Shown here: positions 3,605 to 47,870 of the stretch, one piece after another
Layout of the letters: every line of letters starts with the position of its first letter
Numbering within the stretch: position 1 is the first letter of the stretch
Origin: Takakia lepidozioides
Lineage: Eukaryota > Plantae > Bryophyta
DNA length: 64,000 bases
Assembly: GCA_030704615.1 (NCBI GenBank)
Contig: CM060733.1
Coordinates: 27,032,001 to 27,096,000, forward strand
Direction: 5' to 3'
Notes under the pieces: generated by a model
What the model saw: only the letters and a program-made list of their open reading frames with translations
Told to the model about the DNA's origin: nothing
Databases searched by the model: none
Position numbers and translations under genes: made by a program

Positions 3605-5354
3605 CTAAAGGCGAGCTGCAATTCCAATACGTACTGCCTCTATAAACTTCTCCATAGCTCTCGGAGGGAGTGCGATCGCCACTTCCAAATTTTTCTTCTC
3701 CCCCTCACTTCCACCTGGCAATAGGAAGTAAGCTATGTCAGGCGGCAGGCCTCGAGTGACAGGTCCACAGTAAAAGGGCTTTCCCCACCCAAAGTCGAGG
3801 TCATAGAACCCCAATCGGGACCAGTCGGTAATTGCAAATGATGAATAATTGACCGAAGCTGGCCTCCTCTTTACGTCCTCCATGTTATCAAGTGCGGATC
3901 TCAAGTATTTGTCTGTGAGTGCAGCAACCCCTTGTTGTATAAGGCTCACTGCATAAGACAGAGGCTTGGATAGGAGCTCACCAGCCGTGGTCATAGCGCA
4001 GGCTGGATAAGCTGAGTTACCCACATAGTCGGACGGAACGGGCGGAATAAACTTTGAACGCACATCAACTGCCACGAGGAATTTGGTTTCCTGGGATGGC
4101 TCCATTTCAAGTGCTTTCGTGCGCGCGCGCCAAACATGGGCTGCTAGAGTCTCAAAAGTGGAGCACTTGCTCACATAACCCCCAGGCTCTCCCAATATTT
4201 GTTGAATTAAGTCTGTGAGAGTTTCACGGGTGAAATGGAAAGTGTTGTTTACAAAAGCATCACCCAAGAGATCTTCTGCCAGATCCATCTCGCCAAATTC
4301 ATGGTGTGGGAAGTCAATCTGACGTGGAGATCGTGGGCGAAGCATTGTACGGTCTAAGGATGGAGCACTCAAAGGGGTACTGTCTCCACGCACTATAGCA
4401 GCCCAAGCATTTAGGAACTGCATGACTGAGATGCCGTCCATAAACGCATGGTTAAGGCCTACGCCGAGTGCGAACCCACCACACCTGAACCTTGTTGCCT
4501 GCTAGCACGGAGGGGGGATTGAACAAAACTTAGGTGTTTCTGATTCAACGTGAGGACTCAGACATGCAGTGTTGATTGTCCGACATACAATATTCTGACA
4601 TGATATGAATCTAAAATCTAGTTGGGTCGTCGTCTATTTACTGAGCAAATCACCAACTGGACCTCATTAAGAGTGCAGGCATTTGAGGAAAGATGCATTC
4701 ACATCCTAATGTAGTATCCGTTAATCAAAGTTTCCTCTGTTCTGGAAGGTTTTAAAACACTTACAGTGCGCAGGAAGTTTTAATCGGGCAATACATGCGA
4801 TGCATATATGGCAACCATGAAACAAAATTTTGACATCAGTTATGAGTTACCTGAAGAACCACCGCAGGGGTCACAAGTTGCTGATGCAATGCGTCCTGAT
4901 TCATTGCCTCTGGAACAAAGTAGACCAGTTGCATCAATCTCGGATCGGGCTTGCCAGACTCGGTATATTTTTCCAAGTCAGATATGGCGGCATCTGCCTC
5001 AGCTTCCACAAACAAGACCCCTTTGCCATTACAGTTCAGTTCGAGTTCCCCCTCCAAACTGATCTGAAGCCTTCCTGCTACAGGGTAATACGGGACAAGT
5101 ACCTTCGCAAGTGCCTCTCTCATCGCTTTTGCTACATTGTCATGGTTTTCTGCAGGATAGGCATGATACAAGAAATAAACGTTTACTGTGAAAAGCACGG
5201 GCTGATCCATGTTGGAAAGATACATCACATGATTTCTGGTAGGAACAGCTGGAACAACCACAGTTGGGTCTTTCAAGATCACTTGGAGCTTTGGCTCAGC
5301 TACGATGCCCATGCTTTCTTGCAGTTGTCTAAGTGTTTCGGAAGCTGAGAGCAT
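3605..5354 (-). CDS. BAHD acyl-CoA acyltransferase, 2 exons (5354-4851, 4498-3605)
   Basis: Exon 1 has LSNMDQ and YYPVAGRL. A GT-AG intron falls after VVLQ, the conserved BAHD Q-intron position. Exon 2 reads ATRFRCGGFALGVGLNHAFMDG (HXXXD) and has DFGWG near the C-terminus. The spliced frame is intact. Confidence 0.95.
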
Positions 5355-6477
5355 TCAAATAACCCCAAAACGGAAGTTACGAGGTGAGATACTTCGGACC
5401 ATTCCTCCTTCTCGACCCAGTTGCAGATCTTCGGACTGCAGCTTATAGCTGTACAACATTCTGTCTCTGCCTATCCTCGATATCGTTCTTGCTTGTGAGT
5501 GTTGGCCAGAAGCATACAAGCTACAACGCCCATGAAAACATGATGAACTGCTAAGCCGTGCTAGTCTTGATCCGCCGGCACCTCTTCTCTACCACATTAT
5601 ATAAACTTTGAGGTCGCCACATGAATTGCAACACCCCCACTCTGGATTGCGAGTGATAAAACAGTCTACTTACCGTCACTAAATATTCCCTCCATAACCC
5701 TCGTTTACAGCCCGTGTGGTGGCGGACCTGCTCCAATAAACTTCATGGGATTTGGAGGAAGCTTGGCACACATGAAAGAAAGGGGGTCAGAAAAATGGTG
5801 GACTGAGGGGCCACGCAGAGTTGACAATCAACATGGCTTCCCCTGATTGGCTACACCCTGAGTTCACTTGACCTGCCTGCACTTCAATTTGGACAGATAG
5901 ATTCTGTTTTTTCTAATGTCAAGAGCAGCGTTTCTTATTTTGGCGACCTCAAAAAACAGAAAAGAAAATTCCGTAGCAAATTCCATGTTTTTTCATGGAT
6001 GAAATCGCCAAATTTCTCAAAACAAAAAAATTATGGATGAATTTGCCAAATATGGATGATATGAATGGATGAAAGTATGGATGTGGATGATTATGTCCTA
6101 ATTTGAATGGATGAACAGAATATATGCCTAATTTTTGCAAAACTCTGTAGCCACTGGTGCTATTTTTCGAATTGTAAGAAAAAAACTCTGGTAAAGAGGC
6201 TTGTGGTAGTAGAAATGAGTTCTCCGGAAAAGGCATTTGTGCCATTTCGAGTTTTAGAATGGCCTACTTTGGAGACTACCTCTAATTTTGCAGCTCCATA
6301 ATAGTTTTAATAATTTGACCCCTTTGCAAACACTTAGGAAGGATTATTTTCACCAAAAGGTTGGATTCATTTGAATTTTGGCATGCCAATGCCCACCCTA
6401 TTGCATGTTTAGAAATTTTATGTTTGGCTCATAGGAAAAATCAAAGAACCCTTAATCGTGCTTGGTCAAGACAACCA

Positions 6478-6545
6478 AGCTGTAGCCCAGTGGTAATGGG
6501 CACATAGCACTTGGGAAGTGGTTGTGGGTTCGATCCACCAATTGG
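6478..6545 (+). mobile_element. tRNA-derived SINE head (pol III A/B boxes)
   Basis: A-box-like TAGCCCAGTGG and B-box GGTTCGATCC at tRNA-like spacing, but no full cloverleaf. Confidence 0.45.
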
Positions 6546-7033
6546 TGTCACAAAGGCGTCCACCTTCTTGTCGGATGCAGTAGCCCTTGGGCCCTCAGGA
6601 TATTTGTAATCTAATCTAAGATTAGCCTAAAGAGAGGCCTTGTCCCTACAAGGCATGGGCTTTGTCATTAATGCCAAGAGCCAGGCCCAGGCCACTTGTC
6701 ATTTCCTCCCCATGCCCCTTTGGCCAAACCCACCTCTTGTCATGCATGCGTGCCCTGCCATGCTCCATGCGAGGCCCCATGCCGCATGCTCCATGGTCAT
6801 GTTTGTTATCCATAGATGATTTTAGTGGGATGAGTCTAAAATGGATGAGGTTAGGGATAAGGTTAGGGGTGGGTTTAGGCTCGTTAGGGTCACAACTGTT
6901 TCACAACTGTTTTAACATTGCTTATCTTGGCTCTCGTTCTATGGATTAGTGGACGCGATTATAAGTAGATTAGATTAGTGAGGTGAGCTTGTGGATCACT
7001 AAACTTGATCTGGTGTAGGCCTTCAAGAGCTTC

Positions 7034-7232
7034 GAGGAAACCGCGGTCGAGGTTTCCATGACATATCACTTAAGTGATACAAAATATGTTTAGAGGAAAC
7101 CGTTGTCGAGGTTTCCCTAGCATATCATTTAGGTGATATAAGATATGTTTCGCAGTGGAGGTTTTCCTGGCATATCACTTTGGTGATATAAGATATGTCT
7201 AGAGGAAATTGCGATCAAGGTTTCCTTGACAT
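7034..7232. repeat. Tandem repeat, ~58-bp unit x ~3.5, each unit with two small palindromes
   Basis: Recurring GAGGAAACCG..GAGGTTTCC..CATATCAC..GTGATAT..ATATGT. Confidence 0.8.
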
Positions 7233-7247
7233 GATGGTATACCTTAA

Positions 7248-8469
7248 CCCTTAAGTGTCAAACCGACCGGTTTTGGGTTGGTTAGGTTTCCTTAACTAGC
7301 CATAACTTCCTCTAGTTAAGGCTGATTGGCCTTTTTTTTGGCTCAATCGACAGATAATCGGGTCCTCCTTCATATGGCATTGGCCAATGCCTGAAATGCC
7401 TGAAGTGGTAGGGATCTCGATCAATTGGAAGGGGGCCAACTCAGCTTTTGAGGCCATTTTGGCACCCCTAACCTGCCCAAGTTGCTGACATGGCAATTGC
7501 GGTCACGTTAGGATGAATGAATGATACCCCATAAAGGGATGGGCGGCACGCTTCCCCCAACCAATTGATTGCTCGGTGGGTATGGCGGCCTGCACAGGTC
7601 TGAGTATTCCCAGGCTTGCATCCTAACCTGAGATCGACGGAGGTGGCTGCTCCAGCCAACAGGATGGGCTCATAGCAGGGCAGACTGGAGGGAGTGCAGC
7701 CGCAATGGCGGCAAAGCTCGCGGCTCGAGAAAATCTAGGGTGGGCCAAACCCAGGCGGGGGTTTGATAGGGTTGCGGGTGGAGTGGCCCCCCATGAAAGC
7801 AGGGCTGGGTAGCCAGAGGAGCTCCCAAACCCCGCGCCCTTTTGGGCTACGGCTCCAAATATCCTAGGCGTGCAAGCTATACCAAAGGTGTGCCATTTGA
7901 AGTCTTGGGCATGGAACCTAAGGATGCGGTGCATTGGCTGATTGGCCACAAAGTTTTTCGGGGACTTCACATGGAAGCCCATGACATTTCAACCGGAGGG
8001 ATTAGGGATTGACCGGCTGAATTTTTTTGTATAATTTTAGGAAGAGAGATTTTGGCCTGCCCAAAGAAAATGGCATATTTTGATCCCCCAATTTGTCACT
8101 ACAAAGGAGCCCACTTGAGAATATTTCAGAAAAAGCTGAAATTGTATGAGAATGTGTGTTATCAGGTATGGAACAACATTCTTGAGACTCTGAAAAAATT
8201 AAAAATGCCCAAATACGAGCAAAAAACTGCTTTTTTTGGCACCTAGTTCTAAGTGGAAATTTTTTTTTGTCCCCACTCTACACTTTATAATCTTCAGATC
8301 TGGCAGTTGGATTTTGGTGAAACTTTTTGTGGTAGGAGGTGGGGTAGGTGGGAAGTAATTCCAACGGTCAGTTTTACAGGGACACAGATTCTCTAGATAA
8401 GAAAAAAATTTGTGGGCCAGGGTCATGTTTTTCCACGAGAGGGTGAAAATGAGTTTTGACACTTAATGG
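7248..8469. mobile_element. piggyBac-like MITE with TTAA target duplication
   Basis: TTAA|CCCTTAAGTGTCAAA ... TTTGACACTTAATGG|TTAA: a 15-bp TIR with one mismatch and TTAA on both sides. Confidence 0.6.
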
Positions 8470-11283
8470 TTAATATGTGTGGAGGAAGCGCATTAGAGGT
8501 TTCCTCAGTTTGCAAAGAACTCACTAAGCCCCAAACAAACAAAACCCTCAACCAGCCGCCGCCCTAAGAGATCCTAACATCATTCATCCTAAATTCATCC
8601 CTTAATTCATCCATGGATAACAAACATGCTATGGAGCATGGGGCCTCAGGGGGGAGGGCTCATAGAGCATGGTAGGGCGCATGCATGGTGAGGAGTGTGG
8701 TGAGCAAGGGGGCATGATGAGGAAAGGACATGTGGCCCATTAGTGGTTGACAGCATTAAATGCCACTAATGAGTGGCTTCCTGTAGGGACAAGCCTCTCT
8801 TTAGGCTAATCCTAGACTATATCCATAGGGCCCTTCGGGTCAAGAGACACCATAATTTACGCTTCCTTAATCTCATATTGGGGGGCTTATTCATCATTAC
8901 TTCTACTTCTATTAATTTATTATGTCATGGTTTGCATTTTTTTTTGGGCCCTGCCTGTGCAGAGCCCCCTAGGTATTAGTAAGTAGTTAGTTAGAGGTAT
9001 TAGTAAGTAGTTAGTTAGATAATATAAGGCAGGGGAGAGAGCAGCCCGGCTCTCTTTATATACCCTCAGAGAGCGGTGGGACCCTTCCAGAAGGCCCCAC
9101 ACCCTCAAGCAATGGGACCTTCAAGGAGGCTGTCCTAACACATGTCGCTCCTAGAAACCACCACGCCTGCTTACCCCAACCTAACCATGAACCATCCCCT
9201 ATTTAATAGGTCTTACCTTCCTGCCTTTCCCCCCTCCTTACATGACAGTTAGTTATTAATTAAACTCCTGCTCTAGCTTACTATAACTCCCGTCTTCATA
9301 ATTCCTGGACCACTTTCCAATCCCCCCACCTTTCAAACCTGCCCCCTTATTTACGCTTCCTTGGGGCATCATATATATATACATATGCTTGGTCGAACTT
9401 GTGATTGTATTGTTTGAAAAGTATTTGAAAACCCACCGAGAGTCACGAAAACACTATAATTTTCCAAATTCTCACAGTGGAAATTTGGGAAATTTATGGA
9501 GATGATGAAAGTACCAAACAGGTAGACACTAGACACCTCTATTTCTGGTCAATTACTTTCGATGAAAATTGGTCAGTTGACGGCCTGTGTTCTCGTTCAA
9601 GGATGCAAAGGCAGTTAAGGGTTAACCCTTAAGTGGTATATCGACCATTAAACTGTTTCGGGTCGCCTCATTTTCTCATCCAATCGTAACTTTGTTGGAT
9701 GAAGGCAGATGAAGCTGTCGTCTGAACGAAAAATGGACCCTGCAAAGACCGTACACGCTCCAATTGAAAGCACCAACAAAAAAAAAACAAAAACAAAAAC
9801 AAAAAAAATCCCCAAAAAATTGATTTCCCTGCCCTCAGGAATTTTCCAAAGCGTGGGGAGTCTGGATTTTGGAGTGGATGGGCGGGGTCCACGTAGGTTG
9901 ACTGGGCGAGGTGTAGGTAATACCCCACACGAGGAGGCTTATGCCAAGCGTGAAGAACGCACATGGAGCTGTTGTAATCCAGTAGCCAGCCTGGCGCGTA
10001 GATTATAGGATTCGATCACTGCAACAGCCTTGGACGGTGGATTCACGGATTTATTAAGCTCACCGTTTCCTTCCAGGGAAAAAGCTGCAGTCCTTAACGC
10101 ATTTATGACAAGCGCCTTTATGGAGGCGGGCCACGCCCAATCCGTGGGCTGCCCTTCCACACCAAATCCCAGAGGGCAGGATGTCTGACGACTATGTAGC
10201 GTTTTCTAATCAATTTTCACAAGCAGTGCGAGCGGCCACATGTGTGCTCTACTACATGTGCGCGATATAAGCAAGCTGGCACCTCTACAAAGCTCGCTAT
10301 GTGATACATGGCACGTTTCAATGGCTCTAAGATGGCAGTCCCTACTTACAGGTTTTTCCTGGCGACAACCTCGTGGATCATCCACCTGTTGAAGTTATGA
10401 TAAAAAAAAATTGAAGTTATGACAGTCCCTTTAGGAGCCCAAAGTAAAAGCTAATTTTTCCATGGCTCCTAGCTTATCTTAGGGTATGTTGGAATTCGAC
10501 AAAAAATAGAAATAAAAGATGAACTTATTACTGAGAACTCTCCACCCAACCATAGGACCACAACAAGCTGTCTGTCCACCCTCCCAACTCTCCTTATTTA
10601 TACTCAAAGTCTAATCTAGAAATAGCTGAGATAACTATAGCATAACTTCATGTTTTTACTTAAGTTATCTCCACCTGCTATTTTGGTACAATGACTTGAG
10701 TCACTAATAACTGAAGCTAACTTTAGCTAACTGAGGCTTATCTCTATTGTTAGCTGTGACTTGTCAGCACTGCTATTATGGAAGCCTGACCTGTCATCAC
10801 AGTAACTCTAGGTAATAGTAACTTGGTCAGGAGTTGATTTCCAGCAGGGTAGAAGTACAGGTTAGGTTATAGAGGTTATAGGGGCTGAGAGTTTTGAATG
10901 GCCTCGTGGGGCAGTGGGGGCCCGCCACCTCATTAACATAGACCCGCATGCGTCAAGGTCCTTAGAATTTGTATGGCTTAGGAAATTTATAACTACCTTC
11001 AGTAGTCTGTCACTATTGGTCACAACCTGCCTGAAGGTAGTTGTAAAAATATGCTAAACTACCTTCACAAATATAGTGATAAACTAAGGACTACCTCCAT
11101 GAAAGTAGTTGTAAAAACATGTTGAACTACCTTAGGGCAAATAGTGACAAATTACATGGATGCAGTAGCCATGATCAATACCAACCACCCTATTTAGGAT
11201 TGAGCCCACAACCTCCAAGAGAGCACTAACATCCTCGTAATACCAGTACATCCTTAACACTGGGTAAAATACAAGGATATACG

Positions 11284-12122
11284 GTACTGACCTAGCTTAT
11301 TAGGCAATAGTTAATTCAAAATCAAGTGCCTAATTAAATTTAGAACATTTTTGGAAAATATGCCTAAAACTTGGAAAAGTTTCCTGAGAAGTGCCTAATT
11401 GCTCAGAAATTGTGAAAGACACCAAAATGTCCAAATATGTGGAAAATTTGCCTAAAGGGTATTATTTAAAATCCAAAAAATAGCAAAAATACCTGAAATT
11501 TATAATTTCATGTCCACACAACTTCCAAAGGTCCTGCATTGATGCAACTACATCTTCATAAGTTTCATCACCTATCTCATGTGAATCTTCTCAATTTGAG
11601 AGAATGTTAAGGTCAGGAACATGATCATCCTCGATATGTATGTGCAAGACATCAGCTTATGCTCTCAATGACAAGAGAATTAGGGTTGTGCCAGATGTCT
11701 CGTATAGGCAAAAAAAAAACAATAAAACAGATAAAACAAAACAAAAAAAAACAGTTGGAAAGGCTTAGGGTTTAGTACTTACAGACTTCACTGCAGCCAT
11801 TCTTTTATCACATATCAAACAGTATGTTTTTTAAGAAGAAAATTAACTCAACAATAGTTTTTGAGGGAGGTCAAAAACAATTGTTGAGGTAATATCTATT
11901 TTCAAGACCATTATGTTTTTTTTTTAAACATTACCTCAACAATAGTTTTTGAGGGAGGTCAAAAATAATTGTTCATTATTATCTAGGGTCGACTTTAATA
12001 CATGCCTAATGTTTGGAAATTACCTAGCTGAGGTGCCTAAATAATAAAAACGAATCTGCCTAATAATGTTCTATTTTTATTAATTATTAGGCGCGGAAGT
12101 GCCTAATAAGCTAGGTCAGTAC
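11284..12122. mobile_element. MITE with 23-bp TIRs; a partial inverted second copy follows at ~12145-12482
   Basis: GTACTGACCTAGCTTATTAGGCA at the left and TGCCTAATAAGCTAGGTCAGTAC at the right. Region 11460-11660 is the reverse complement of ~12290-12482. Confidence 0.75.
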
Positions 12123-12484
12123 ATAGTAAGAAAATATATAATGTTTGATATGAGATAAAAGAATGGCTGCAGTGAAGGTTGTATGTATTAAACCCTAAAT
12201 TTTTCCAACCGTTTTTGTTTTTTTCTTATGTCTACTTTTATGGAAGTGTTGAGAGATAGAAGTGAAGAGATGCTTTCAGAGCATGAGCAAATGTCTTGCA
12301 AACGTGCATATCGAGGATGATAATGTTCCTGACCTTAACATTCTCTCAGATTCAGAAGCTTCACATAAGAGAGGTGATGAGGCTTACAAATGTAGTTGCA
12401 TCAATGTAGGGCCCTTTGGAAGTTGTGTGGACATGAAATTTTTAATTGTAGGCATTTTTCCATTTTTGGACTTTAAATAATACA

Positions 12485-13172
12485 TCTCTCAATTACAAGA
12501 AGAGCCCTTGTTGCTAATCAGATTCATTCAGTTGGATTATGGTATTATGCTTCTTCCTGGTGCCCAAGCTCTAAACAGATTCAGGAAATCAAGCGCCTGC
12601 TTAGGAACTTTGTCTAGGGAGCCGAGACCTCATCCCAAAACAAACGACCGCTTGTAGCCTAGGCTCAAATCTGTTTACCCAATAAAAAAAAAGGGGTTAG
12701 GGACTCAATCCAGAAACACAGATTGTAGCTCTTCTTGGCAAATGGATACCCAGGTTTCTAGGGCCGGAGGGGGGATGGTGGAAATTCTTGGTCTATGACC
12801 ACATTACAAAATCCTCCCCTCTCAAGACTACCCAATGGAGCCTTTCCCCACGTAACTCAAGGATTTAATCTTAAGACAGTGGGATCTGCTCTATGGTCTA
12901 ACATCTGGTCAGCCTGGGGGCGGCTAAGGAAACTGCTTGTAAAAGCCCAGCCAAGTACCTTCTATGAAATTAAGAGACAACACTTGTTTCTAAACGACAC
13001 TCCTCAGACCCCTTCTCAGAAAAACCAGGCAAAAAAGTGGTCCAAATGGGATTGCCTTGGCATCAGACAAATTCATAACATATGGTCAGGGATCGGTTTC
13101 ATATCTCTACAATCTATGGCTCAGGCTGTAGGCCTCGTAAGGGCCACAAAAGGCCACCAACAACTTGTTTAA
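12485..13172 (+). mobile_element. L1-like LINE ORF2 fragment (post-RT region), degenerate
   Basis: Broken frames read RALVANQI..LWYYAS, ICLPNKKRGLG, ALLGKWIPRF..WWK and WSNIWSAW, typical of the plant L1 ORF2 C-terminal region. Confidence 0.7.
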
Positions 13173-13177
13173 TCTGT

Positions 13178-14610: not shown

Positions 14611-14611
14611 A

Positions 14612-14955
14612 TTACAATCTCAAACAGTGACACGAGTGAGTTCCATTTCCAGAAATATGACCAAAGAAGACTACTCCCTTTCTCTTACACTCAATACATC
14701 CAGTTCTTATCCAATAGGCCTGTGAATCAATCTTATAATGTTGTGATTTCACAAGCTGTGCTTATTCTATACATTTCCAGCAATGCTGATTTAGCTGGGA
14801 AGGAGTGTAGCATTCTGATTAACACTCTTGGGAGGAATGGTTTCAAGACCAGAAAACTTGCTCGTATCTTGACAAGGTTCCTTGAACGTGGTTCATTCCT
14901 TGGCCTGTTCTTCCTTGCACAAGAGCTTATTGAGAAACTGAAAGGTATTTCCTAA
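14612..14955 (+). mobile_element. Penelope-like retroelement RT thumb/C-terminal fragment (Naiad/Chlamys-like)
   Basis: KYDQRRLLPFSYTQYIQFLSNRPVNQSYNVVISQ...LINTLGRNGF resembles the PLE motif YDKRxxFxFxxxxFxxxxSNxPxxxxYGVxISQ...LxxxGY. Confidence 0.55.
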
Positions 14956-34802: not shown

Positions 34803-34806
<4 letters not shown>

Positions 34807-34840: not shown

Positions 34841-34843
<3 letters not shown>

Positions 34844-34861
34844 CCATACATACAAACAACC

Positions 34862-35961: not shown

Positions 35962-36070
35962 TGTGTAGCCCCGGTGGTTCGGGGTTCGAACCCGTTGCCC
36001 AGTCCTGTGTGTGATTGTTGTGTCGCCCTGGTGGTTTGGGGTTCAAACCCGCTGCCCAGTCCTGTGTGTG
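35962..36070 (+). repeat. Two-copy ~57-bp tandem repeat containing a B-box-like GGTTCGAACCC
   Basis: TGTGT..CCC.GGTGGTT.GGGGTTC.AACCCG.TGCCCAGTCCTGTGTGTG occurs twice. Confidence 0.75.
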
Positions 36071-38548: not shown

Positions 38549-38668
38549 GTGACATGTGACATCCAAGGTGAGTTGTGACTGCCTGTACTTATCTTTTACG
38601 TAGCACATTAGCTGCCCTGTAGCGGATCTTTTGCCTCCCTATCTCTCTCTCTCTAACTCTTTATATTG

Positions 38669-38669
<1 letters not shown>

Positions 38670-38699
<30 letters not shown>
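38670..38699 (+). repeat. (GA)n microsatellite
   Basis: Perfect GA run. Confidence 0.95.
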
Positions 38700-38702
<3 letters not shown>

Positions 38703-39982
38703 ATGATTTAGGAGTCTGGCATGCAAGCCTCCCAAAAGCTGAATTTTTTTATTGATGGGCAGGTACTGGGAGGCAATTGGCGGAATGTGATGCGGCCAGG
38801 AGCACTGGCACGTGCATCCATTCCAGGTCGGTGAAGACTACCATAGCCGCCTATGAAGTTTGCCACATTGGTGGTTTGACAGATGGTTCAGTGATGGTTC
38901 AACAGCTAGAGGGACCAAGTATGCAAATGGGAAGGAAGCAAATTGATAAAGGACCTATAATAGCTATTTGGCTGTCACCATTGCGGCAATCGCCGCGGAG
39001 AGAGGTGTGATCTGTCACACGTAGCCTCTCCTTCCTATGCGATGGAGGTGTAGGTTTCGAGGTTGGGGTGGTAGGGGCAAGTTCATTTAATCAGATTACA
39101 GGTCCACTGATCCTGGTTGATTGATTTGCATGCCAGGATTGCAGATCACATTCCCCCGAACATAATCATAGCCAGGTAGGCAAATTTAAGAAATGTCACT
39201 AGGCTGCTGCGCCATGTGGGACGCCTGCTCATCAGAAAAGAAGCAGGCATGCAACGACTCTTTCCCCAGTGCGTTTCCTGTATGAAGCGCCAGAGTGCTG
39301 CACTTCACGATGGCAAGCATGCTTTGGTGTTCCACTTCTGACAAGGTTTTCCGGAGGTGGGCTCAATTCTGTAACTCTTCTGACCTTCTGTCAGTGGATT
39401 ATATTGCAGGCAGTCCAACTCACATCAGAGTTTCAGAATATGGTTGTGCTGTGAGCCTTGAGTTGTGAATCCCCATGTGACTGGTGGTTAGGGTTCCAAG
39501 TGTGTTGAGGGGGCAAGTGTGGGTGGGATGGCAGCCACCTTACTGGACAGGTTTATGTATAGGAGCATTGCAGCTGGAGGAGCATAATATGGCCCAAAAA
39601 TCATAAAGACTGCAGCCCCGCAAGGACAAGACACACTTAAAATCCCTAGTAGATTGGTAGATCATGCAATGAGGTTGATTATTTCTCTTGCTACCTTCAC
39701 ACGACTTAACGGCGGAATGTGGACCATTTGTACCTGAATGTGGATACTCCTCGGATTCTGATAGTATCTGAAGTTGTGCTTCAAAACTTCGAACTTTCCT
39801 CATCAGCAGAGCGTTATATTTCAGATCCAGAGCATCCTTCTACATGCAGACGAGTTAATATCCAGAGTAACCTTAAAGCAATATTTAATGTTTTGGACAA
39901 AGTGAAGTTCAAGACCTACTTTCTTTTGGGTTGATTCAACCTTTTGAGAAATGTGACTAAGCTGTTTGCAAAGAAACATTAA

Positions 39983-40317
39983 CCCCTAAGCGACCCAACT
40001 TGGGTCGGTTGGGTTTAGAAAACAGGTTTAGAAAACAGGCTGGTTATCCCTGAGGTTAAGCCTGATGTGGGCCCACATAGGCTCATGCGATTGGAAATCA
40101 AGGCAGGTATGACGTGGCATTTCCCAATTGGTCATATGACCTGACAATTGTCACGTGGAGAGCGCGGAGTCCACACTAGACCCGCGGAGTCCACACTACA
40201 CCCTAAACCCTGCACGTGTTTTACAGGGCCTTAGTAAATCTCAAGATATAAATGTTTTAGAGGGCCAGGGTCCAGTTTTTGAGGTCTTGGCAAAAATTGG
40301 CCCTTGTCCTTTAGGGG
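39983..40317. mobile_element. piggyBac-like MITE (~335 bp) with TTAA duplication
   Basis: TTAA|CCCCTAA ... TTAGGGG|TTAA. Confidence 0.55.
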
Positions 40318-40746
40318 TTAAAGAGTTTACAATATATAAAAGTGTCATCATTTATTTTATCCTACATGCGAAAGCTCCAAGTGGAGAGTTTCACAGTTTC
40401 TCCTCCCAAAAACCCAATGATGGAGAACCTCCCCAGATCTCTCGCCCAGTTCCAAAACCTCCAGGCGGAGATGTTCTGAATTTCTCCAAAATCTAGGGTG
40501 GAGAGTTTCTCTACTTCTCCAAATTCATGGATAGAGAACCTCCCATATCTCTCCACCTCGGGATATTGAAGAATAATCCACATTCTCCACCTGGAGATGG
40601 AAGAATTTCAGATTCTCTCAGTGTAAATCTCCTGGAGATTTATGTGGATTTCTGTTCACAATCTCCGGGTGGAGAAACTTCAAAACCTCCTTGTTAGTCT
40701 TCCCTCCAAGTTGAGAACATTGAAGAAAGCTACTCTGTCGTGTTCT

Positions 40747-43700
40747 TCAAGTTTGTAATCTCTTTGCAATTTTCAAGAGCAACCCCTTTTTCACGTGGTC
40801 GACGGTAAGTTCCTCATTGGGGTCAACAAGTGACCATTGTAAGCGTCTAACCAGTTGATCCAGAAACACCAACATCTCCAGCCTCGCAAACTCAGCGCCA
40901 GGGCAGCTGTGTAGACCTCCTCCAAATGGTACAAACGTGTACTGAGGAGGTCCAATACCTTGGAATCGAGATGGGTCGAATTTGTGTGGTTCAGGAAAGT
41001 ACTCTGGGACCATGTTGGAGCGGAATGATGAATTCATCACCTGTGATATCACATAGGACACAACATACTGGAAGTAAGATCTAGACCTAGCTTCAGAAAT
41101 CAAGTTTTCTTCAATGGAGAACTGTAAATCTATGAGTTTTTTAGGCCTAGTTCTCAGAAAGTGTGAGCTGATCATGCGAGATACAGTGATATCCGACAAT
41201 GCTGATTGCTTTGGACGAGTTATTGACCACTTGAACATGATGAGTTTAGGTGGTTTTGATCGATGAAGCCCAATGCTTGGATTAGTGCCCAATATTGAAT
41301 AAGGACAAAGAGAGAATTAGATGAGCTACTGGGTGGATCTTAGCAGGATGTACCTTCCACCCCTTGGGAATTGTAAAGCCTTCGAATTCAAAATCGGTAA
41401 TAGCCTCCCGAAAGGCTAATGGCACCACTGGTACTATGCGCATACTTTCTTGGATTACGCGCCATGTGTACTCCATGTGCTTCGTATTCGTCCAGTTCAT
41501 TCCTACTCCAGGTTCCCTCTCTGCAGCAATCTGTCTTAGCTCTGCAAACTTGTACAAAAAAATCAGCAAGCACTTCTATTGGAAGAAGAAGAAGACGAAG
41601 GTAAGTGAACTCCTGCTGAAATAAGCGGAAGCCGAGTGCAATGCGAAGAGATAATTTAATAGCTAGAATAAGAAGTTGTTTCACTTATTTTTTGTTATAT
41701 TATGATAATTTGCTGGTATACTAAAGACATCATATTGGGTTTACACATGTCTAGTGTAAACCTTCATGATTATGTATTAAGATTAAGCTTGGCTGGTAAG
41801 CACTTTCGAAGCGTCTTCTATGGTTTGGAGGTGAGCAAGTATACTTTATTATCATCTTTCTAGTCTGCTGGTCAATTTGCTTGTAGTGAATTATTGAAAC
41901 AACTTCATCTTTGAGGTGTGTACAATCTACCACTTGATGGCCGGGCACGTTGGCATCAACCTCACACGCTATGCACATATTTCATGGGAAGCACCCTCAC
42001 CCATGCCAATTCTCATATCAATGATGTCATAGGAAACGTACTACAATGTGGCATGAGATGAAGGCTACCTTTCAGAATCTCGTTCACGCAGGTCGGATTT
42101 TCAGCCAAGAGGCGCACCGTCGTGGAAAGGGCGGAGGCCGTGGTTTCGTGACCAGCAAACAGGAGAACAACAATGTTGTCTTGGATGGCTGCCTCGGAGA
42201 GGAACTGTTCATTCTCGTCCGGCGTCGTCAGGAGCACCGACAGAAGGTCTTGACGCGGCGATGCGCGTTTGTCTTTGAGTTCCTGCCACGGTCCAGATCT
42301 TGCATGGTCATAACAATGCTTGACCAATCCCTGATCTGTTGAAAAGAAAGAAAGACGGCAACTGTCTTCGAGGAGGTGTAAATGCATCTGCCTCATAAAA
42401 AACGGTCATTCAGCTACGAGCTTGAATTGCAGTATGTAGCAAGTGTAATAGCACCTAGTAAATTAGATGGTAGATCCCGCTTTTAGTTGTACAAGAGGTT
42501 CTCTTGTTACCTGGCGCCTTCTTGTCATGATGGCAACGAGGCAGCTCTGGATGGTCTGACGTGCCCGTTTAGCTTTCCAGAAAGTAGTGCCCGGGATATC
42601 GAAGGGAAGGCTCATGAGGCCTTCCACCATAGCGTTGAATGCATCGAAAAGTCTGTCGAGTTCAGGGCCCTCCTTTAAGCTCAAGAACAGGTCGCATGAC
42701 AAAACAAATGCAAATAGTTTGAGGCACGTAGATCCTGTCACTTGGTCTTGATTCTCCCAGTGCTTGGATATGTGGGCCGCTGCCAATACCTCCATTCTTG
42801 GCACAAGACTCTGGAGCGATTCAGGACTGAAGAAAGTCATGACGATTCGGCGGATGCGTCTGTGCAATCTCCCCATAGTGGAGATTAGTTCAAAGCAGCA
42901 GCATTGTGCAGTCACTTGGGCGAACTTTTAGGAATTCTTATCGTGCGTCAAATTGTCTCACAATAGCAAGGTCGAGCACGTGCACATTGTTTGGATGGCA
43001 AGCTTATTGTGTATGAAGTTGCTGCATGCCAATCTACAAATTGTATTTTTGAATCTTAAGTAGAGCAGTGATCATCATACCACATGCCATGGTCATGTAC
43101 ACAGACATGCTGCAAATACTGCTTTAGACCTTTCTGGAAACTTGGTGAAGTTCTACGGTTGAACATTTGTTTGAAATAGGTACCAGTTCAAAGGAAGTCT
43201 GTAAGCAAATCGGTCACTTGTTTTGGCAAGTTTCTTCATTGACAAGTTTGTCCATTTCAGAAGACAATCATTCTTAAGGGGTATTATTTACCTGTGAGAG
43301 TTGGGGGTCGCGTTGAAAAAATTGGCTTCCCTTCCGAGAAGATTGACAATTGCGTCGGGCCAGCAATCTCGAACCAGTTTGTTCTCATTGGTAAACACGA
43401 ACTTGTTTCCAGCAGGCGCGGGCAAGCATACAGTCTGTGTTAGCAACAACGATGTTTTTAACACCCTTCCATATTTCTCCTCCCGAGTCTGCGACCAGAT
43501 CAAATTATGAGATCATTTGGCAGACAGCTCTGAAATCGACTAGATCTTGCGACTCAGAAATTGACCTATTGTGTCAACACTGTATTTCACTTATGCTACG
43601 TGGATGATCGATAATTGGATTAACAAATGCCACGGACTCAAACTAAATATAATAGCTCAGCTGCTCGTGGCAAGTTTTCCTTCCACATTTGTTATTAATC

Positions 43701-44270
43701 GCAACAGCACGCTGAGGCGGTATCCCACAACTGATGTCGACATGCAAGAGAACGGAAGTGTGTGATTCAATTACTCCAGAATCGCTTCGTCTGTTCAACA
43801 CTCCACCCAACTCTATGGGAATCATACTCACTACGTGTTCCAGCACCGGAATAGTTACCCGTCTCACCGCCGGGTGTCTTCATGTTCCCTTCATGACGTA
43901 CAAGGTTTCCAATAACATTGCTCAGGTGCATACAACAAGACCTCTTTCATTCGAGTACACGTATGTCTAGTCGAAGCATCTAAAATAGCGTCCTTGGCAT
44001 TACCTGAAAGAAATCTCCGAGTCTGTTGATGCGCATCGCTGAGAAGAAGCTAACTGTCTCCCCAATAACTGGAAGCCCAAATCGACCCGGTGGAAGTGGG
44101 GGCCGGCCTCTGAGCCGATTCTTCTCCGATTGCAAGGGAATAATCCGGAAAACCAGCCACAACACCAGAGTGCCAAACAGCAGTGCAAAGAGTGAACCCA
44201 AAGTGTCCCCATTTCTGATCATTCCCGTATACACTTGCCACAGTCTGTCGATCTCAACCACTTTTGTCAT
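40747..44270 (-). CDS. Cytochrome P450, CYP85 clan (CYP716/CYP725-like), 6 exons: 44270-44004, 43488-43292, 42859-42511, 42282-42069, 41541-41354, 41040-40747; ~502 aa
   Basis: N-terminal TM anchor, LPPGRFGLPVIGET, I-helix AGHETT, K-helix ESMR, FDPSRF and heme motif FGGGLHSCPG. All five introns are GT-AG with consistent phases. The spliced length is 1509 nt and open. Confidence 0.95.
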
Positions 44271-45109
44271 ACCTACCCACGGAGCCCTCCAGTCTAGAAT
44301 CTAGACTCAACACTTCAGGCCCCGGCAGCTTTGGGTCTCAGTCTCTTCGCTTGAACTCGTAATATTACCGTCTACCCGAAAAGGAGCGCCAAATCACCAG
44401 CCGGCTTGCTTGCATGCTCATTTTAGGAGCCCAGAATGCGGGCTTTGCACATTTTGCAGATGCGAGGAACTCGTGCCTGGGTCTGGCGTTGCCTTTACAT
44501 GTTCCGTGCAGGGGCGGCTGAGCCTACTGTCTCTCATGTTTGTGAAGATGTTCCATCCACTCTATTTCTTACGTCATGCATGCATCTGTGAACATACCCT
44601 ACCTACTAGCCGGTGCCCATGTGGCAGTTCTGCGCTTCAACTGACATTGGCTTCAGAAATACAGTGGATGAAAACATCTTCACTTGAGGAGCCATCCAAA
44701 CCTGACCTCACTCTTGTAACCTCACTCCGCAAAGTCGCCTGTAATAAGTATGTTTAGGGAAAAGTACTGTTCCTTCCCAGTAAGTTACCCAACGAGTTTT
44801 TAATTGTACCCAGCGCCCCCCCCCACATGGCGAAATTGAGCTGTTACCATCAATAATGCTGGGAGGGACTAACTTAATAAGGATCACTTGAGATGGTTTC
44901 CAATAATTCTGTCAGATACCATCGCTGTCTGGCACCATCACTCAATTATGTACCAGCTCATAATAGTCCACTTTATGGCTCACTCTCCCTAATGGTTTAT
45001 CCTCCAAATTTATTTTTTTAGAGGGCCCTAGGACCTCCCATAGGAATTCACCAGGGCACCTTGGGCTTCAAGGTGTGAGACCTGCACCATCTGTCTGTCC
45101 CCAACCATT

Positions 45110-45850
45110 TCGCTTCGCCAACCTTGAGATTCATCCGTAAGCTAGAAGAGTCCAGAAAGTGGCTAAAAAATTAGCTTCCTCATTTGCTCAAGATAGGAAC
45201 AGCAGAGAGAAGACATGACCTCTCAAATGTCTTGCTCAATGCCAAAAGGTTATTGAATTGAATATGCTGGGCCCTCAAACCATGGCTTCTTTTGCTCTGG
45301 CAAAACGCAACTTGACAGAATTGGTTAAGGCCAGGGAGGATGTATTATCTGCGTAGAAAGGCTGGAATAAACTGGTCGTTGAAAGGGGACAAGATGACCC
45401 GATACTTCTTCCTTAAAGCTAAGCAAAGGCGTGCAGCAACCACGATTAGTGCTCTCACTAATCATTAGGGAGTCATGCTCACTGATCCCAAGGAAATGAC
45501 ATCATTTGCTGCTTCTTATTTCTCCACCCTTTTCAACAAATGTGCTTAGATGACCCGCTGCAAACCTCTTCTAAGAATTCGATTCTTGCCAGTTTCCCCT
45601 CCATCATTACTCGTGATGATCTCCTCAGCCTTTCTGCTCATTTCTCTGCCATGGAGCTGGAGGACGCTCTGAATAAGCTTAGTTCTTTTAAGTCACCGGG
45701 TCTGGATGGCCTTCCGGTGGAGTTCTACAAAGCGATTTGGATGGAAATGAGTGATGATTTTATAGCTATGACAAACATCCTGAAAAAATAAATTATGCCT
45801 TCCCAACTTTCCCAGGGTGTCATAACCCTTATCTTCAAAAAAGGTACAGT
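45110..45850 (+). mobile_element. L1-like LINE ORF2 fragment between the P450 and MTPSL genes
   Basis: KGDKMTRYFF, LTDPKEM..YFSTLF, KSPGLDGLPVEFYK and GVITLIFKKG, with stops and frameshifts. Confidence 0.85.
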
Positions 45851-46252
45851 CTAACCTCTTTAATATGACTCTCCATAATGTGACAACAAATTTTGTGTTC
45901 ACCAAACTTTGTAAGCAAACTTAGCTCAGATCTCCCCCTATTATATGACTATGACTCTCTTTATTATGACACTCCAACACTTACTTTGTCATATTAAGGA
46001 GGTTTATACTATTTTAATGATGGTGGGACCCACCAACCTTTGGGCCGGGGAACATTGGGAACATACATAAGGAAATGGGAACAATTTTTTTTGGGTGTTC
46101 TCTTATCCCTTTACCGTTTTGGGCTGAAAAGCTGGGTGCAAAAAGCAAGGTATATAAAACACTTCTGTTCTGCTTTCTTGATAGATTATCATCATTTAGG
46201 CTCAGGCATCCTGTACCCTCCTTAGTGGCGCTCTATGAATGGTGAGGCCGGA

Positions 46253-46430
46253 CACGTGGCAGTCATCCCACATGGGCTTCTGGAGCCTATTTAGGGGCGC
46301 GCTGCTGGAAGGAGGAAGCGCGTGAAAAGCATGGAAGTGTACCAGTGGGCCCTCTGTTGGGCCCGACAGGGTAGCGAAGAGATATATAGGTAATGCTCTG
46401 CGAGACAAGCTCAACTGTGTTGGGCCTTCA
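46253..46430 (+). promoter_or_regulatory. Putative MTPSL core promoter (G-box, TGGGCC site-II motifs, TATA)
   Basis: CACGTG at 46253, TGGGCC at ~46346, 46358 and 46421, TATATA at ~46383. Confidence 0.35.
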
Positions 46431-46766
46431 CATACCTAACTAAGTCTCAATGCAGGAAATATAGAACCTCAGTAGTTGTCGTGATCAAGGGCGATCAGAG
46501 GAGAAATACCTACAGATCCGCTTTCCGGCTCTAATCGAGAGCTCCGCGGATGGGAATTGTGAAGGTACTCAGCCGATAGTCAGGTTTTGGGCAGCTGACG
46601 AGGTCACGAGACCGCAGCTGAACGCGGAGGGAGTTGGAGTTGCAACGTTGCTTATACTGTGATATTTGTCATCACGTTAAGGCTGCCACCCTCTTCATAA
46701 CTCGGCTGCCCGCGCGCTTTCTAGTGGGCCACTAGCTCTAGTACTAGCTGCCGGGAGGACTGCAGA

Positions 46767-47870
46767 ATGGTTCCCCAGCTTCAGAGCTCGTCTGAACACC
46801 TATCCCCTGTCAAGAATCCCACGAACGATGAGATGGAGCTTCCGCCTCTCGTCCCTTCCATGGTCATCAGAGGCCTCCCACCTCGGCAACAGAGCATGTT
46901 TGTAACTGAAGCCAAGGAACGCCTGATGAAAATTGCGGAGCACTGGCAGATCAACTCGTTTGAATCCTATTGTCGTCTGTCCATCTCGTGTGTCAGCTTT
47001 TTGTACAGCGGAGCCGTCAGTTGTGATCGTTTGGTAGCCATCTCTACTGCATACACCGTCATGTTCATCCTGGATGATCTTTTGTTTGATTCCCCAAACG
47101 ACTTGCTCCTCGAGGAGTATGGCATCGATCGCGGCATCCGTGAGAGCCCTCACAAAATCGGAGAGTTCCTCAACAACTTGAACCTCCTCTTCCGGCAACA
47201 AGAGCCTCCGCGCGATCCCACCCCGATCGAGGGGATGATGTGGGACTTGGGTCAGGACATGAGACGCTTGTCCAACCCGGAATGGTTCAATACATTTACA
47301 GACGCTGTTATCGGGCACCACAGAGTGGGCGTTGCCAGCCTTGCAGACGCTGCAGGCAACCGCTTATATTTGCAAGACTTGGAATCTTTCACCCAAATAC
47401 GCGCCTGGAACTTTGGAAGCTTGTTTGTTGTAAATTTCGTGGAGTTTGGCAAGAACGCCTTTCTTCCAGACGAGGTGCGCGCGCAACCCGTCATCCAACA
47501 GCTGACCAACGCCGCCGGCATTCAGGCCGCTTTCGCCAACGACATTTTCTCCTACCCCAAGGAGGTGGCGCAGGAAGACAATCCGCTCAATTTAATCATG
47601 GTGTTGATGCAATCTGAAGGCACAACGCTACCGCAAGCTGCGTGGAGAGCCGTGGATTTGGCAAACTCGTACGCTCGCGTCGTCCTGGAGCTGGAGACGC
47701 AGTTGGCCGTGTGTGAGGCGGAACCTTGGGCCCATGTTGTGCGCCGCTATGTGGAAGGTTTGAAGGAGCTCATGTCTGGCAACATTCACTGGAGCAGCCT
47801 GCACAAGCGCTACCGGCATCCCGACTCAGTTTTCCCAGAGCTCAGAGCCATCACCAATGTCCAACCATGA
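46767..47870 (+). CDS. Microbial terpene synthase-like protein (MTPSL; class I, alpha-domain only), 367 aa, intronless CDS
   Basis: DDLLFD (DDxxxD), pyrophosphate-sensor Arg in QIRAWNFG, NDIFSYPKE (NSE/DTE triad) and WSSLHKRY (WxxxxxRY). It has no plant-type N-terminal beta domain. Confidence 0.95.
   Translation: MVPQLQSSSEHLSPVKNPTNDEMELPPLVPSMVIRGLPPRQQSMFVTEAKERLMKIAEHWQINSFESYCRLSISCVSFLYSGAVSCDRLVAISTAYTVMFILDDLLFDSPNDLLLEEYGIDRGIRESPHKIGEFLNNLNLLFRQQEPPRDPTPIEGMMWDLGQDMRRLSNPEWFNTFTDAVIGHHRVGVASLADAAGNRLYLQDLESFTQIRAWNFGSLFVVNFVEFGKNAFLPDEVRAQPVIQQLTNAAGIQAAFANDIFSYPKEVAQEDNPLNLIMVLMQSEGTTLPQAAWRAVDLANSYARVVLELETQLAVCEAEPWAHVVRRYVEGLKELMSGNIHWSSLHKRYRHPDSVFPELRAITNVQP

What the first reader, a model, noticed from the sequence alone, without database searches (positions are those of the whole stretch)
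3605..47870. Candidate terpenoid biosynthetic gene cluster built on a microbial-type terpene synthase (MTPSL + CYP85-clan P450 + BAHD acyltransferase)
Seen: three intact enzyme genes in 44 kb, and everything I can identify between the BAHD and the P450 is TE or pseudogene debris, so they are consecutive intact genes. Established: terpene synthase, then P450 hydroxylation, then BAHD acylation is a standard route to acylated terpenoids; MTPSLs are microbial-type enzymes of non-seed plants. Inference: a cluster making an oxidised, acylated mono- or sesquiterpenoid, in which a microbial-origin scaffold enzyme is paired with native plant tailoring enzymes. I do not know of such a cluster being characterised, but I cannot verify novelty. 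The BAHD link (35 kb away) is weaker than the P450-MTPSL link.
Basis: partly seen in the sequence, partly recalled or inferred. Interest (0 to 1): 0.9.

Follow-up and report, generated by a model that had tools for sequence, protein, structure and literature searches.

The report
Candidate bryophyte terpene gene cluster
In a non-seed plant (probably a bryophyte), an intact microbe-type terpene synthase lies head to head with a terpenoid-type P450 oxidase, and an acyltransferase lies 35 kb away; they may form a small pathway, but nothing yet shows that they work together.

Summary
One is an intronless 367-aa microbial-type terpene synthase (MTPSL, 46767-47870 +). One is a six-exon CYP716-like (CYP85-clan) P450 (44270-40747 -). 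One is a two-exon BAHD acyltransferase (5354-3605 -). All catalytic motifs are present.

The P450 and the MTPSL are divergent, with 2,496 bp between their start codons. The 35 kb between the BAHD and the P450 holds only Ty3/gypsy pieces, PPR relics and repeats, as far as ORF scans can tell.

The cluster reading is plausible but unproven:
- No P450 or BAHD lies within 10 kb of MTPSL homologues in Ceratodon or on metagenome contigs.
- One MTPSL-P450 adjacency per genome is roughly what chance would give.

Unchecked notes from this scan suggest a rival. They report HAD-cyclase + CYP716-like P450 + BAHD trios elsewhere on the same chromosome piece, and a fossil HAD cyclase 762 nt beyond this window. 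The P450 and BAHD here may therefore be relics of that module. The scan also noted another MTPSL cluster candidate elsewhere in this genome.

My odds are about 0.35 for a working P450-MTPSL pair and about 0.15-0.2 for all three genes in one pathway. An MTPSL-based plant cluster (MpMTPSL2-MpCPT5) was described in 2026; I found no report of an MTPSL-P450 pair.

The parts
46767..47870 (+). Microbial-type terpene synthase (MTPSL): intronless, 367 aa, no transit peptide. Asp-rich motif DDLLFD (the DDxxxD form), NSE motif NDIFSYPKE, C-terminal KRYRH.
   Evidence: The Pfam match is PF19086, E 3.7e-25. The motifs are read and are conserved across 9 homologues. Solved relatives by sequence are all bacterial or fungal class I synthases. 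The AlphaFold model has pLDDT 84; the best structural matches are bacterial and fungal sesquiterpene synthases with target TM-scores of 0.85-0.89.
44271..46766 (.). Intergenic region of 2,496 bp between the divergent P450 and MTPSL start codons; a candidate shared (bidirectional) promoter.
   Evidence: The region has 46.7% GC. None of its ORFs of 70 aa or more matches a Pfam family, and it shares no repeat with the rest of the window. Promoter function is inferred, not shown.
40747..44270 (-). CYP716-like (CYP85-clan) cytochrome P450 with six exons: 44270-44004, 43488-43292, 42868-42511, 42282 (alternatively 42330)-42069, 41541-41354 and 41040-40747. It has an N-terminal membrane anchor and a PPLPPG hinge, the I-helix AGHETT, ExxR (ESMR), PSRF, and the haem loop FGGGLHSCPG.
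   Evidence: Pfam PF00067 matches the exons. Splice sites are read and the frame is checked. The best PDB matches are CYP120A1, taxadiene 5-alpha-hydroxylase and CYP90B1. The nearest named proteins are Selaginella CYP716K1/L1 and conifer CYP716B. The exon pieces tile these proteins end to end.
3605..5354 (-). BAHD acyltransferase with two exons (5354-4851 and 4498-3605), a 352-nt intron after the conserved Q, 465 aa, and the HAFMD (HxxxD) and DFGWG motifs.
   Evidence: Pfam PF02458 matches at E 9e-51 and 7e-28. The sequence is read. Homologues are 46% identical or less. In the tree it lies outside the HCT clade on a long branch.
5355..40746 (.). Spacer of 35 kb with no recognisable intact gene. 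It holds a Ty3/gypsy fragment at about 13.1-14.9 kb, PPR/E+ relics at about 20.5-21.0, 29.7-30.1 and 32.7-34.1 kb, and tandem repeats at 27.6-29.7 kb.
   Evidence: Pfam scans. Repeats.

Best explanation
The locus is a real neighbourhood of intact specialised-metabolism genes in a non-seed plant. Its most likely functional unit is the head-to-head P450-MTPSL pair.

Proposed mechanism:
1. The MTPSL has no transit peptide, so it would be cytosolic. It would ionise farnesyl diphosphate through its DDxxxD and NSE metal sites and cyclise it to a sesquiterpene.
2. The ER-anchored CYP716-like P450, transcribed from the shared 2.5-kb intergenic region, would hydroxylate that skeleton.
3. The cytosolic BAHD 35 kb away may then esterify the new hydroxyl group from an acyl-CoA.

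Shown here: gene integrity, family assignments, catalytic motifs, orientation and spacing.

Inferred: the subcellular locations, the substrate (FPP), co-regulation, and every enzyme-to-enzyme link.
For: - All three genes are intact and keep every catalytic motif.
- The P450 and MTPSL are divergent, 2,496 bp apart, and the spacer carries no TE that I could detect. The proven MpMTPSL2-MpCPT5 pair (1,556 bp; bioRxiv 10.64898/2026.07.16.738752) and the Dictyostelium DdTPS8-CYP521A1 pair (PMC6524965) have the same geometry.
- The nearest named relatives of the P450 are CYP716 members, and its best PDB matches include taxadiene 5-alpha-hydroxylase, so it belongs to a terpenoid-oxidising lineage.
- The closest solved structures to the MTPSL are sesquiterpene synthases. 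It lacks the 60-90-residue N-terminal extension of its Ceratodon homologues, which fits a cytosolic FPP pool on the same side of the membrane as an ER P450 and a BAHD.
- The BAHD is a fast-evolving gene without close relatives and is not the conserved HCT.
Against:
- No P450 or BAHD lies within 10 kb of MTPSL homologues at two Ceratodon loci or on several metagenome contigs, and no MTPSL lies beside the Riccia P450 relative. These relatives are only 30-50% identical, so this is weak evidence.
- Chance is not excluded. P450s make up about 1% of plant genes, and non-seed plants carry tens of MTPSLs (48 in Selaginella, PMC6779861). About one MTPSL-P450 adjacency per genome is therefore expected by chance; this is my rough estimate.
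- The BAHD is separated from the pair by 35 kb of debris, and its best-named relatives are feruloyl-transferase-like.
- Scan notes place a fossil HAD-type cyclase just beyond the window and HAD + P450 + BAHD trios elsewhere on the same piece. This suggests that the P450 and BAHD originally served another scaffold enzyme.
- An upstream MTPSL exon encoding a transit peptide is not excluded: a CAG acceptor-like site sits directly before the ATG.
Confidence: 0.35

Rival explanations
1. Relic of another module. The P450 and the BAHD are a TE-stretched duplicate of a 'HAD-type drimane cyclase + CYP716-like P450 + BAHD' module that recurs on this chromosome piece. Their own cyclase has decayed to the fossil just beyond the window's end. 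The MTPSL is a bystander that happens to lie between them. The P450 and BAHD either act in trans on drimanes made at other loci or are on their way to decay.
For: Scan notes, which are unchecked AI notes, report the following: a fossil HAD-terpene cyclase 762 nt beyond the window's end (s1-474445); HAD cyclase + CYP716-like/CYP85-clan P450 + BAHD trios at +8.09 and +8.12 Mb, one of them followed up as transcribed; and a HAD + P450 pair at -11.2 Mb. The gene order here, BAHD - P450 - (MTPSL) - fossil cyclase, puts all three module members within about 63 kb, and much of the distance is TE insertion. In my own analysis the window's P450 is CYP716-like, the class named in those notes.
Against: I could not read the other loci or the fossil, so paralogy is untested. 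The by-sequence look-up came back blank. The window itself holds no HAD or cyclase remnant. A P450 kept fully intact across six exons next to an intact MTPSL also fits recruitment to the MTPSL.
Confidence: 0.3
2. Chance co-location. Three unrelated specialised-metabolism genes lie in a gene-poor, TE-rich stretch, each serves a different pathway, and the head-to-head arrangement carries no regulatory meaning.
For: By my rough estimate about one MTPSL-P450 adjacency per genome is expected by chance, given tens of MTPSL copies and a P450 share of about 1% of genes. Linkage is not seen around relatives. The BAHD is 35 kb away and its best-named relatives are lipid or phenolic acyltransferases. A fourth, unrelated intact gene (DUF8204) flanks the BAHD.
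Against: All three consecutive intact genes right of the DUF8204 gene belong to classic terpenoid-pathway classes. The P450 is specifically of a terpenoid-oxidising lineage. The divergent spacing of 2.5 kb matches proven co-regulated pairs. The recurrence of P450 + BAHD beside terpene cyclases in this genome (unchecked) argues that these two families tailor terpenoids here.
Confidence: 0.3
3. One or more of the genes is a recently dead or silent copy despite its intact reading frame, so no pathway operates from this locus.
For: The surroundings are rich in pseudogene relics and TEs. The scan notes a frameshifted MTPSL and a fossil cyclase in the same genome. I have no transcript evidence.
Against: The three genes span 1.1-1.5 kb of coding sequence each with no internal stops, all splice sites are canonical and all catalytic motifs are kept.
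Confidence: 0.1

Closest known systems
MpMTPSL2-MpCPT5 mini-cluster of Marchantia polymorpha (bioRxiv 10.64898/2026.07.16.738752)
   Same: In both, a microbial-type terpene synthase lies head to head with a non-homologous pathway gene across a short intergenic region (1,556 bp there, 2,496 bp here) in a bryophyte.
   Different: The Marchantia partner is a cis-prenyltransferase that supplies the substrate (NPP), not a tailoring P450. That cluster is backed by knockouts, promoter reporters, co-expression and H3K27me3 data; this locus has none of these. The Marchantia paper reports no P450 or acyltransferase in its cluster.
DdTPS8-CYP521A1 cluster of Dictyostelium discoideum (PMC6524965)
   Same: A single-domain, microbial-type class I sesquiterpene synthase and a P450 are transcribed divergently, and the P450 acts on the synthase's product.
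   Different: That organism is an amoeba. Its P450 belongs to an unrelated family and cleaves the skeleton to a C12 product. Function is proven there and only inferred here.
Seed-plant terpenoid clusters of the TPS/OSC + CYP716-type P450 + BAHD kind
   Same: The same three enzyme classes occur in the same logical order: scaffold, oxidation, acylation. The tailoring enzymes are native plant genes.
   Different: The scaffold enzyme here is a single-alpha-domain MTPSL of microbial ancestry, not a plant beta-alpha or gamma-beta-alpha TPS or an oxidosqualene cyclase. The gene spacing is inflated by TEs.
Fungal drimane-ester cluster drt of Aspergillus calidoustus (PMC8596746), which parallels the HAD-cyclase + P450 + BAHD loci noted elsewhere in this genome
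   Same: The pathway logic is the same (cyclase, then P450 hydroxylations, then an acyltransferase making sesquiterpene esters), and it is relevant to the rival reading.
   Different: The fungal scaffold enzyme is a HAD-like class II cyclase, its acyltransferase is an alpha/beta hydrolase and not a BAHD, and the cluster includes a PKS. In this window the HAD cyclase is absent; a fossil copy is reported only beyond the window's end.

Membership tests
[quoted passage not shown] | The protein matches the microbial class I terpene synthase profile (PF19086) and not the plant TPS N- and C-terminal domains. | tested here: met
   PF19086 matches at E 3.7e-25, and no PF01397 or PF03936 match is listed.
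[quoted passage not shown] | A single alpha-domain of about 350 aa, closest in structure to bacterial or fungal synthases. | tested here: met
   The model is all-helical over 367 aa with pLDDT 84. The top 50 PDB fold matches and all listed sequence matches are bacterial or fungal class I terpene synthases, the best of them sesquiterpene synthases (target TM-scores 0.85-0.89 for T-muurolol synthase); no plant TPS appears.
[quoted passage not shown] | An Asp-rich motif (DDxxD or the DDxxxD variant) together with an NSE/DTE metal-binding motif. | tested here: met
   DDLLFD and NDIFSYPKE are present and conserved in the homologues. DDxxxD is described as the MTPSL variant form, and the two moss group II isoprene synthases PcISPS and LjISPS carry it (PMC13098426).
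[quoted passage not shown] | The gene is encoded in a plant nuclear genome and is not contaminant DNA. | tested here: met
   On the same contig it is flanked by an intron-containing plant P450 and BAHD, PPR relics, a DUF8204 land-plant gene and a Ty3/gypsy chromovirus.
[quoted passage not shown] | Terpene synthase activity on a prenyl diphosphate. | not testable with these tools
   This needs a recombinant enzyme assay with DMAPP, GPP, NPP and FPP.
CYP85 clan / CYP716 family P450 | P450 signature motifs: haem-binding FxxGxxxCxG, ExxR, the PERF-type motif, I-helix (A/G)GxxT and an N-terminal anchor. | tested here: met
   FGGGLHSCPG, ESMR, PSRF, AGHETT and a hydrophobic N-terminus followed by PPLPPG are all present.
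CYP85 clan / CYP716 family P450 | The nearest relatives are CYP85-clan members. | tested here: met
   The best PDB matches are CYP120A1, CYP725A4 (taxadiene 5-alpha-hydroxylase) and CYP90B1. The best named database relatives are CYP716K1/L1 of Selaginella and CYP716B of conifers.
CYP85 clan / CYP716 family P450 | At least 40% identity to family members, the nomenclature rule for membership of one P450 family. | tested here: inconclusive
   Identity to CYP716K1, exon by exon, is 35, 53, 32, 45, 39 and 50%, or about 42% over the aligned parts. This is borderline. The joined protein was not compared as a whole.
BAHD acyltransferase | A PF02458 fold with the HxxxD catalytic motif and the DFGWG motif. 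| tested here: met
   PF02458 matches both exons. HAFMD lies at the start of exon 2 and DFGWG is present.
HCT (shikimate hydroxycinnamoyl transferase, housekeeping BAHD) | The protein groups inside the conserved HCT clade that includes bryophyte and lycophyte orthologues. | tested here: not met
   In a tree of 52 proteins the HCT clade has SH-aLRT 100 and excludes the window's BAHD, which sits on a branch of length 1.0 beside the 'HHT-like' and BEBT-like groups (exon 2 only).
Plant biosynthetic gene cluster (operational definition) | Two or more non-homologous enzyme genes are physically adjacent. | tested here: met
   The MTPSL, P450 and BAHD are consecutive recognisable intact genes within 44 kb, and the P450 and MTPSL are 2.5 kb apart.
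Plant biosynthetic gene cluster (operational definition) | The member genes are co-expressed or share chromatin regulation. | not tested
Plant biosynthetic gene cluster (operational definition) | The encoded enzymes catalyse steps of one pathway. | not testable with these tools
   This needs stepwise reconstitution and metabolite analysis.
Plant biosynthetic gene cluster (operational definition) | Linkage is conserved in related species (supportive, not required). | tested here: not met
   No P450 or BAHD lies within 10 kb of MTPSL homologues (two Ceratodon loci and several metagenome contigs), and no MTPSL lies beside the Riccia P450 relative. No close relative of this genome was available, so the test is weak.

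The most novel reading that the evidence does not exclude
Scaffold swap inside a duplicated cluster. The P450 and BAHD arrived here as a copy of the genome's HAD-type drimane cyclase + CYP716-like P450 + BAHD module. The class II HAD cyclase of this copy then decayed to the fossil just beyond the window. The surviving tailoring enzymes were re-used on the product of a class I microbial-type terpene synthase, which now shares a bidirectional promoter with the P450. This would be a plant cluster caught exchanging one horizontally acquired scaffold enzyme for another.
Probability: 0.12. Interest if true: 0.85.

Novelty: new variant of a known kind. Interest (0 to 1): 0.5.

Why it matters
How bryophytes decorate the terpenes made by their microbe-derived synthases is largely unknown, and very few biosynthetic clusters have been shown outside seed plants. 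If this pair is confirmed, it would be the first plant case in which an MTPSL is clustered with a tailoring P450; the one published MTPSL cluster pairs the synthase with a substrate-supplying prenyltransferase. It would show a horizontally acquired scaffold enzyme wired to native plant tailoring enzymes. It would also give a compact three-gene set that can be tested directly in yeast or Nicotiana benthamiana. If the module-relic reading is right, the locus instead documents how clusters duplicate, get stretched by transposons and lose or exchange their scaffold gene.

Tried and rejected
- Synteny: the look-up of encoding contigs on MTPSL homologues P0007, P0009, P0010 and P0012 and on the Riccia P450 P0151 showed no partner genes. 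tblastn of the window's exon pieces against these loci confirmed this. A metagenome scan returned only short plant-like contigs and bacterial synthases.
- Source genome: the exact MTPSL protein is not on record in the public collection, so the genome and its close relatives could not be reached.
- Paralogy with the HAD-cyclase loci: the by-sequence look-up in the scan's notes was blank. Those windows cannot be read from here.
- Readings I rejected: the BAHD as an HCT orthologue; a hidden gene on the + strand at 33.5-40.7 kb, since a C2-like fragment at about 37.9 kb has no accompanying exons; and an intact ASY3 gene at 25.7 kb, since the only match is one fragment at 22 bits against a cut-off of 25.7.
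- Spliced models: the P450 and BAHD were searched exon by exon, by reference, only. The joined proteins were not sent to any search or folding tool. Joining was done only inside a script, to count frame, stops and GC.
- Jia et al. 2016 (PMC5087002) is not held in the library, so the MTPSL group assignment rests on PMC13098426.

Full report
**What is there**

The window is plant nuclear DNA with about 39-54% GC.

- A 367-aa open reading frame at 46767-47870 (+) matches the microbial class I terpene synthase family PF19086.
- Two frames at 3605-4441 and 4836-5354 (-) match the BAHD 'Transferase' family.
- Frames at 40747-41292 and 42013-42396 (-) match cytochrome P450.
- tblastn with all fetched homologues finds one copy of each gene and no further fragments.

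**Gene models**

The MTPSL is a single exon. It carries DDLLFD, NDIFSYPKE and a C-terminal KRYRH, and these are conserved in nine homologues.

The BAHD has two exons, 5354-4851 and 4498-3605, joined across a 352-nt GT-AG intron after the conserved Q. The HxxxD motif (HAFMD) sits at the start of exon 2 and DFGWG lies near the C-terminus.

The P450 has six exons: 44270-44004, 43488-43292, 42868-42511, 42282-42069 (alternative in-frame acceptor at 42330), 41541-41354 and 41040-40747.

- All five introns are GT-AG and the phases fit.
- Counting gives 505 codons with no internal stop.
- The exon pieces tile full-length CYP716-type proteins end to end, for example residues 3-469 of the 469-aa CYP716K1.
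- The membrane anchor, proline hinge, AGHETT, ESMR, PSRF and FGGGLHSCPG are all present.

The joined proteins were not sent to any search or fold tool.

**Family placement**

MTPSL:
- By sequence, its solved relatives are all bacterial or fungal class I synthases: 10-epi-cubebol, T-muurolol, selinadiene and presilphiperfolanol synthases.
- An AlphaFold model built from 10 sequences (pLDDT 84) is one all-helical domain. Its best PDB matches are again bacterial and fungal sesquiterpene synthases, with target TM-scores of 0.85-0.89.
- Its closest database proteins are 56% identical or less. The named ones come from the moss Ceratodon, at 47-48%.
- The DDxxxD form of the Asp-rich motif is described as the MTPSL variant, and the two moss group II isoprene synthases carry it (PMC13098426).
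- It lacks the 60-90-residue N-terminal extension of the Ceratodon proteins, so a cytosolic location and FPP as substrate are the likeliest inference. An upstream exon is not excluded, because a CAG sits directly before the ATG.

P450:
- Its best solved matches are CYP120A1, taxadiene 5-alpha-hydroxylase (CYP725A4) and CYP90B1.
- An exhaustive search with exon 3, followed by a name look-up, gives Selaginella CYP716K1/L1, conifer CYP716B, a Taxus P450 and a Riccia P450.
- Identity to CYP716K1 is about 42% over the aligned exons. It is therefore CYP716-like within the CYP85 clan, at the border of the 40% family rule.

BAHD:
- Its best hits are 46% identical or less. The named ones are automatically called omega-hydroxypalmitate O-feruloyl transferase (42-44%), and HCT-named proteins are at 34-38%.
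- In a 52-protein tree it is excluded from the HCT clade (SH-aLRT 100), a clade that does contain bryophyte and lycophyte orthologues.
- It sits alone on a branch of length 1.0 beside the 'HHT-like' and BEBT-like groups.
- It is thus not the housekeeping HCT, but its substrate cannot be read from the sequence.

**Surroundings**

Between the BAHD and the P450 lie 35 kb. I scanned 111 stop-to-stop frames of 75 aa or more.

- The only Pfam matches are PPR/E+ fragments, a reverse transcriptase, an aspartyl protease and one ASY3-like piece below threshold.
- Self-comparison shows that the stretch at 13.1-14.1 kb is 83-90% similar to the Ty3/gypsy element at 56.6-60.4 kb, and that the PPR relics are copies of one another.
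- Tandem repeats fill 27.6-29.7 kb.
- A C2-like fragment near 37.9 kb has no partner exons.

Right of the MTPSL lies a Ty3/gypsy chromovirus with gag, RNase H, integrase and chromodomain matches. Left of the BAHD is a fourth intact gene, a DUF8204 protein at 582-1322 (+), about 50% identical to moss, liverwort and Selaginella homologues alike.

**Is it a cluster?**

In favour:
- The head-to-head P450-MTPSL arrangement has a 2,496-bp spacer that shares no repeats with the rest of the window.
- The terpenoid-oxidising ancestry of the P450 fits a tailoring role.
- The inferred compartments are compatible.
- Two proven precedents share the geometry. One is MpMTPSL2-MpCPT5 in Marchantia, with a 1,556-bp bidirectional promoter. 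The other is DdTPS8-CYP521A1 in Dictyostelium.

Against:
- There is no expression evidence.
- No linkage appears around the only relatives whose neighbourhoods I could read. These are distant homologues, and the source genome and its close kin are not in the public collection.
- The chance expectation is high. P450s make up about 1% of plant genes and non-seed plants carry tens of MTPSLs (48 in Selaginella). By my rough estimate, about one MTPSL-P450 adjacency per genome arises by chance.
- The BAHD link rests only on the lack of intact genes in between.

**A rival from the scan's own notes**

These are unchecked AI notes. On the same chromosome piece they report HAD-type drimane cyclase + CYP716-like/CYP85-clan P450 + BAHD trios at +8.09 and +8.12 Mb, one of them followed up as three transcribed genes. 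They also report a HAD + P450 pair at -11.2 Mb and a fossil HAD-type cyclase only 762 nt beyond this window's end.

The order BAHD - P450 - MTPSL - fossil cyclase suggests that the P450 and BAHD may be a TE-stretched copy of that module whose cyclase has died. The MTPSL would then be either a bystander or a new partner. I could not read those loci, so this stays a lead. It lowers my confidence that the MTPSL is the P450's partner, and it raises my confidence that the P450 and BAHD tailor sesquiterpenoids.

Other notes record another MTPSL cluster candidate and a frameshifted MTPSL in this genome. Other agents guessed the organism to be a liverwort or the moss Takakia. My data (moss-type MTPSL relatives, PPR-E+ relics, and a DUF8204 protein equidistant from mosses and liverworts) fit a deep-branching bryophyte but do not settle the question.

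**Verdict**

- Odds: P450-MTPSL functional pair about 0.35; all three genes in one pathway about 0.15-0.2; relic of the HAD module about 0.3; chance co-location about 0.3. The first and third readings overlap in the 'scaffold swap' case, at about 0.12.
- Literature searches found an MTPSL-based plant cluster (2026 preprint) but no MTPSL-P450 or MTPSL-P450-BAHD cluster. If real, this is a new variant of a known kind.
- Interest is 0.5. It is a well-formed, directly testable candidate, and not yet a finding.

Noticed in passing
window 582-1322 (+): This is an intact single-exon gene for a DUF8204 (PF26631) protein. It is 46-58% identical to homologues in mosses, liverworts and Selaginella alike. 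It marks the left boundary of the enzyme neighbourhood. The local Pfam copy did not match it; the family assignment comes from precomputed annotations of the hits.
   Followed up: partly
window 20450-21050, 29700-30100, 32700-34100: PPR (PLS-type, one with an E+ motif) gene relics are scattered on both strands and are 79-95% identical to one another. They look like dispersed copies of one pseudogene fragment, perhaps TE-borne; the scan notes a Pack-CACTA element carrying PPR pieces about 24 kb beyond the window.
   Followed up: partly
window 27600-29750: A block of tandem or interleaved direct repeats has periods of about 200-400 and 549 nt and 63-97% identity. It matches no protein family.
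   Followed up: no
window ~54000-62800 (-) and 13100-14950 (+): A Ty3/gypsy chromovirus carries gag, zinc knuckle, RNase H, integrase and chromodomain. A second, fragmentary copy of the same family (83-90% identical) lies inside the BAHD-P450 spacer. Inverted 400-nt segments at 56629-57030 and 60010-60425 are 92% identical.
   Followed up: partly
window ~37850-37950 (+), within ORF 37454-38158: A short stretch resembles the start of a C2 domain (GELSITLIEARNLPY). No Pfam match and no neighbouring exons were found, so it is probably a gene fragment.
   Followed up: partly
just beyond the window's end (about 64.8-66.3 kb in window numbering; not readable here): Scan note s1-474445 reports a fossil microbial-type HAD-terpene cyclase (drimane-synthase-like) here. 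Together with the P450 and BAHD in this window, it may mark a decayed copy of a module seen intact elsewhere on the same chromosome piece.
   Followed up: no
L001 (Ceratodon purpureus CM026436.1) 10001-11556: The Ceratodon MTPSL homologue P0007 aligns in two pieces (10280-10810 and 11035-11526), so it has an intron. The window's gene and the second Ceratodon homologue (L003) align in a single piece. Both Ceratodon proteins carry a long N-terminal extension that is absent here.
   Followed up: no
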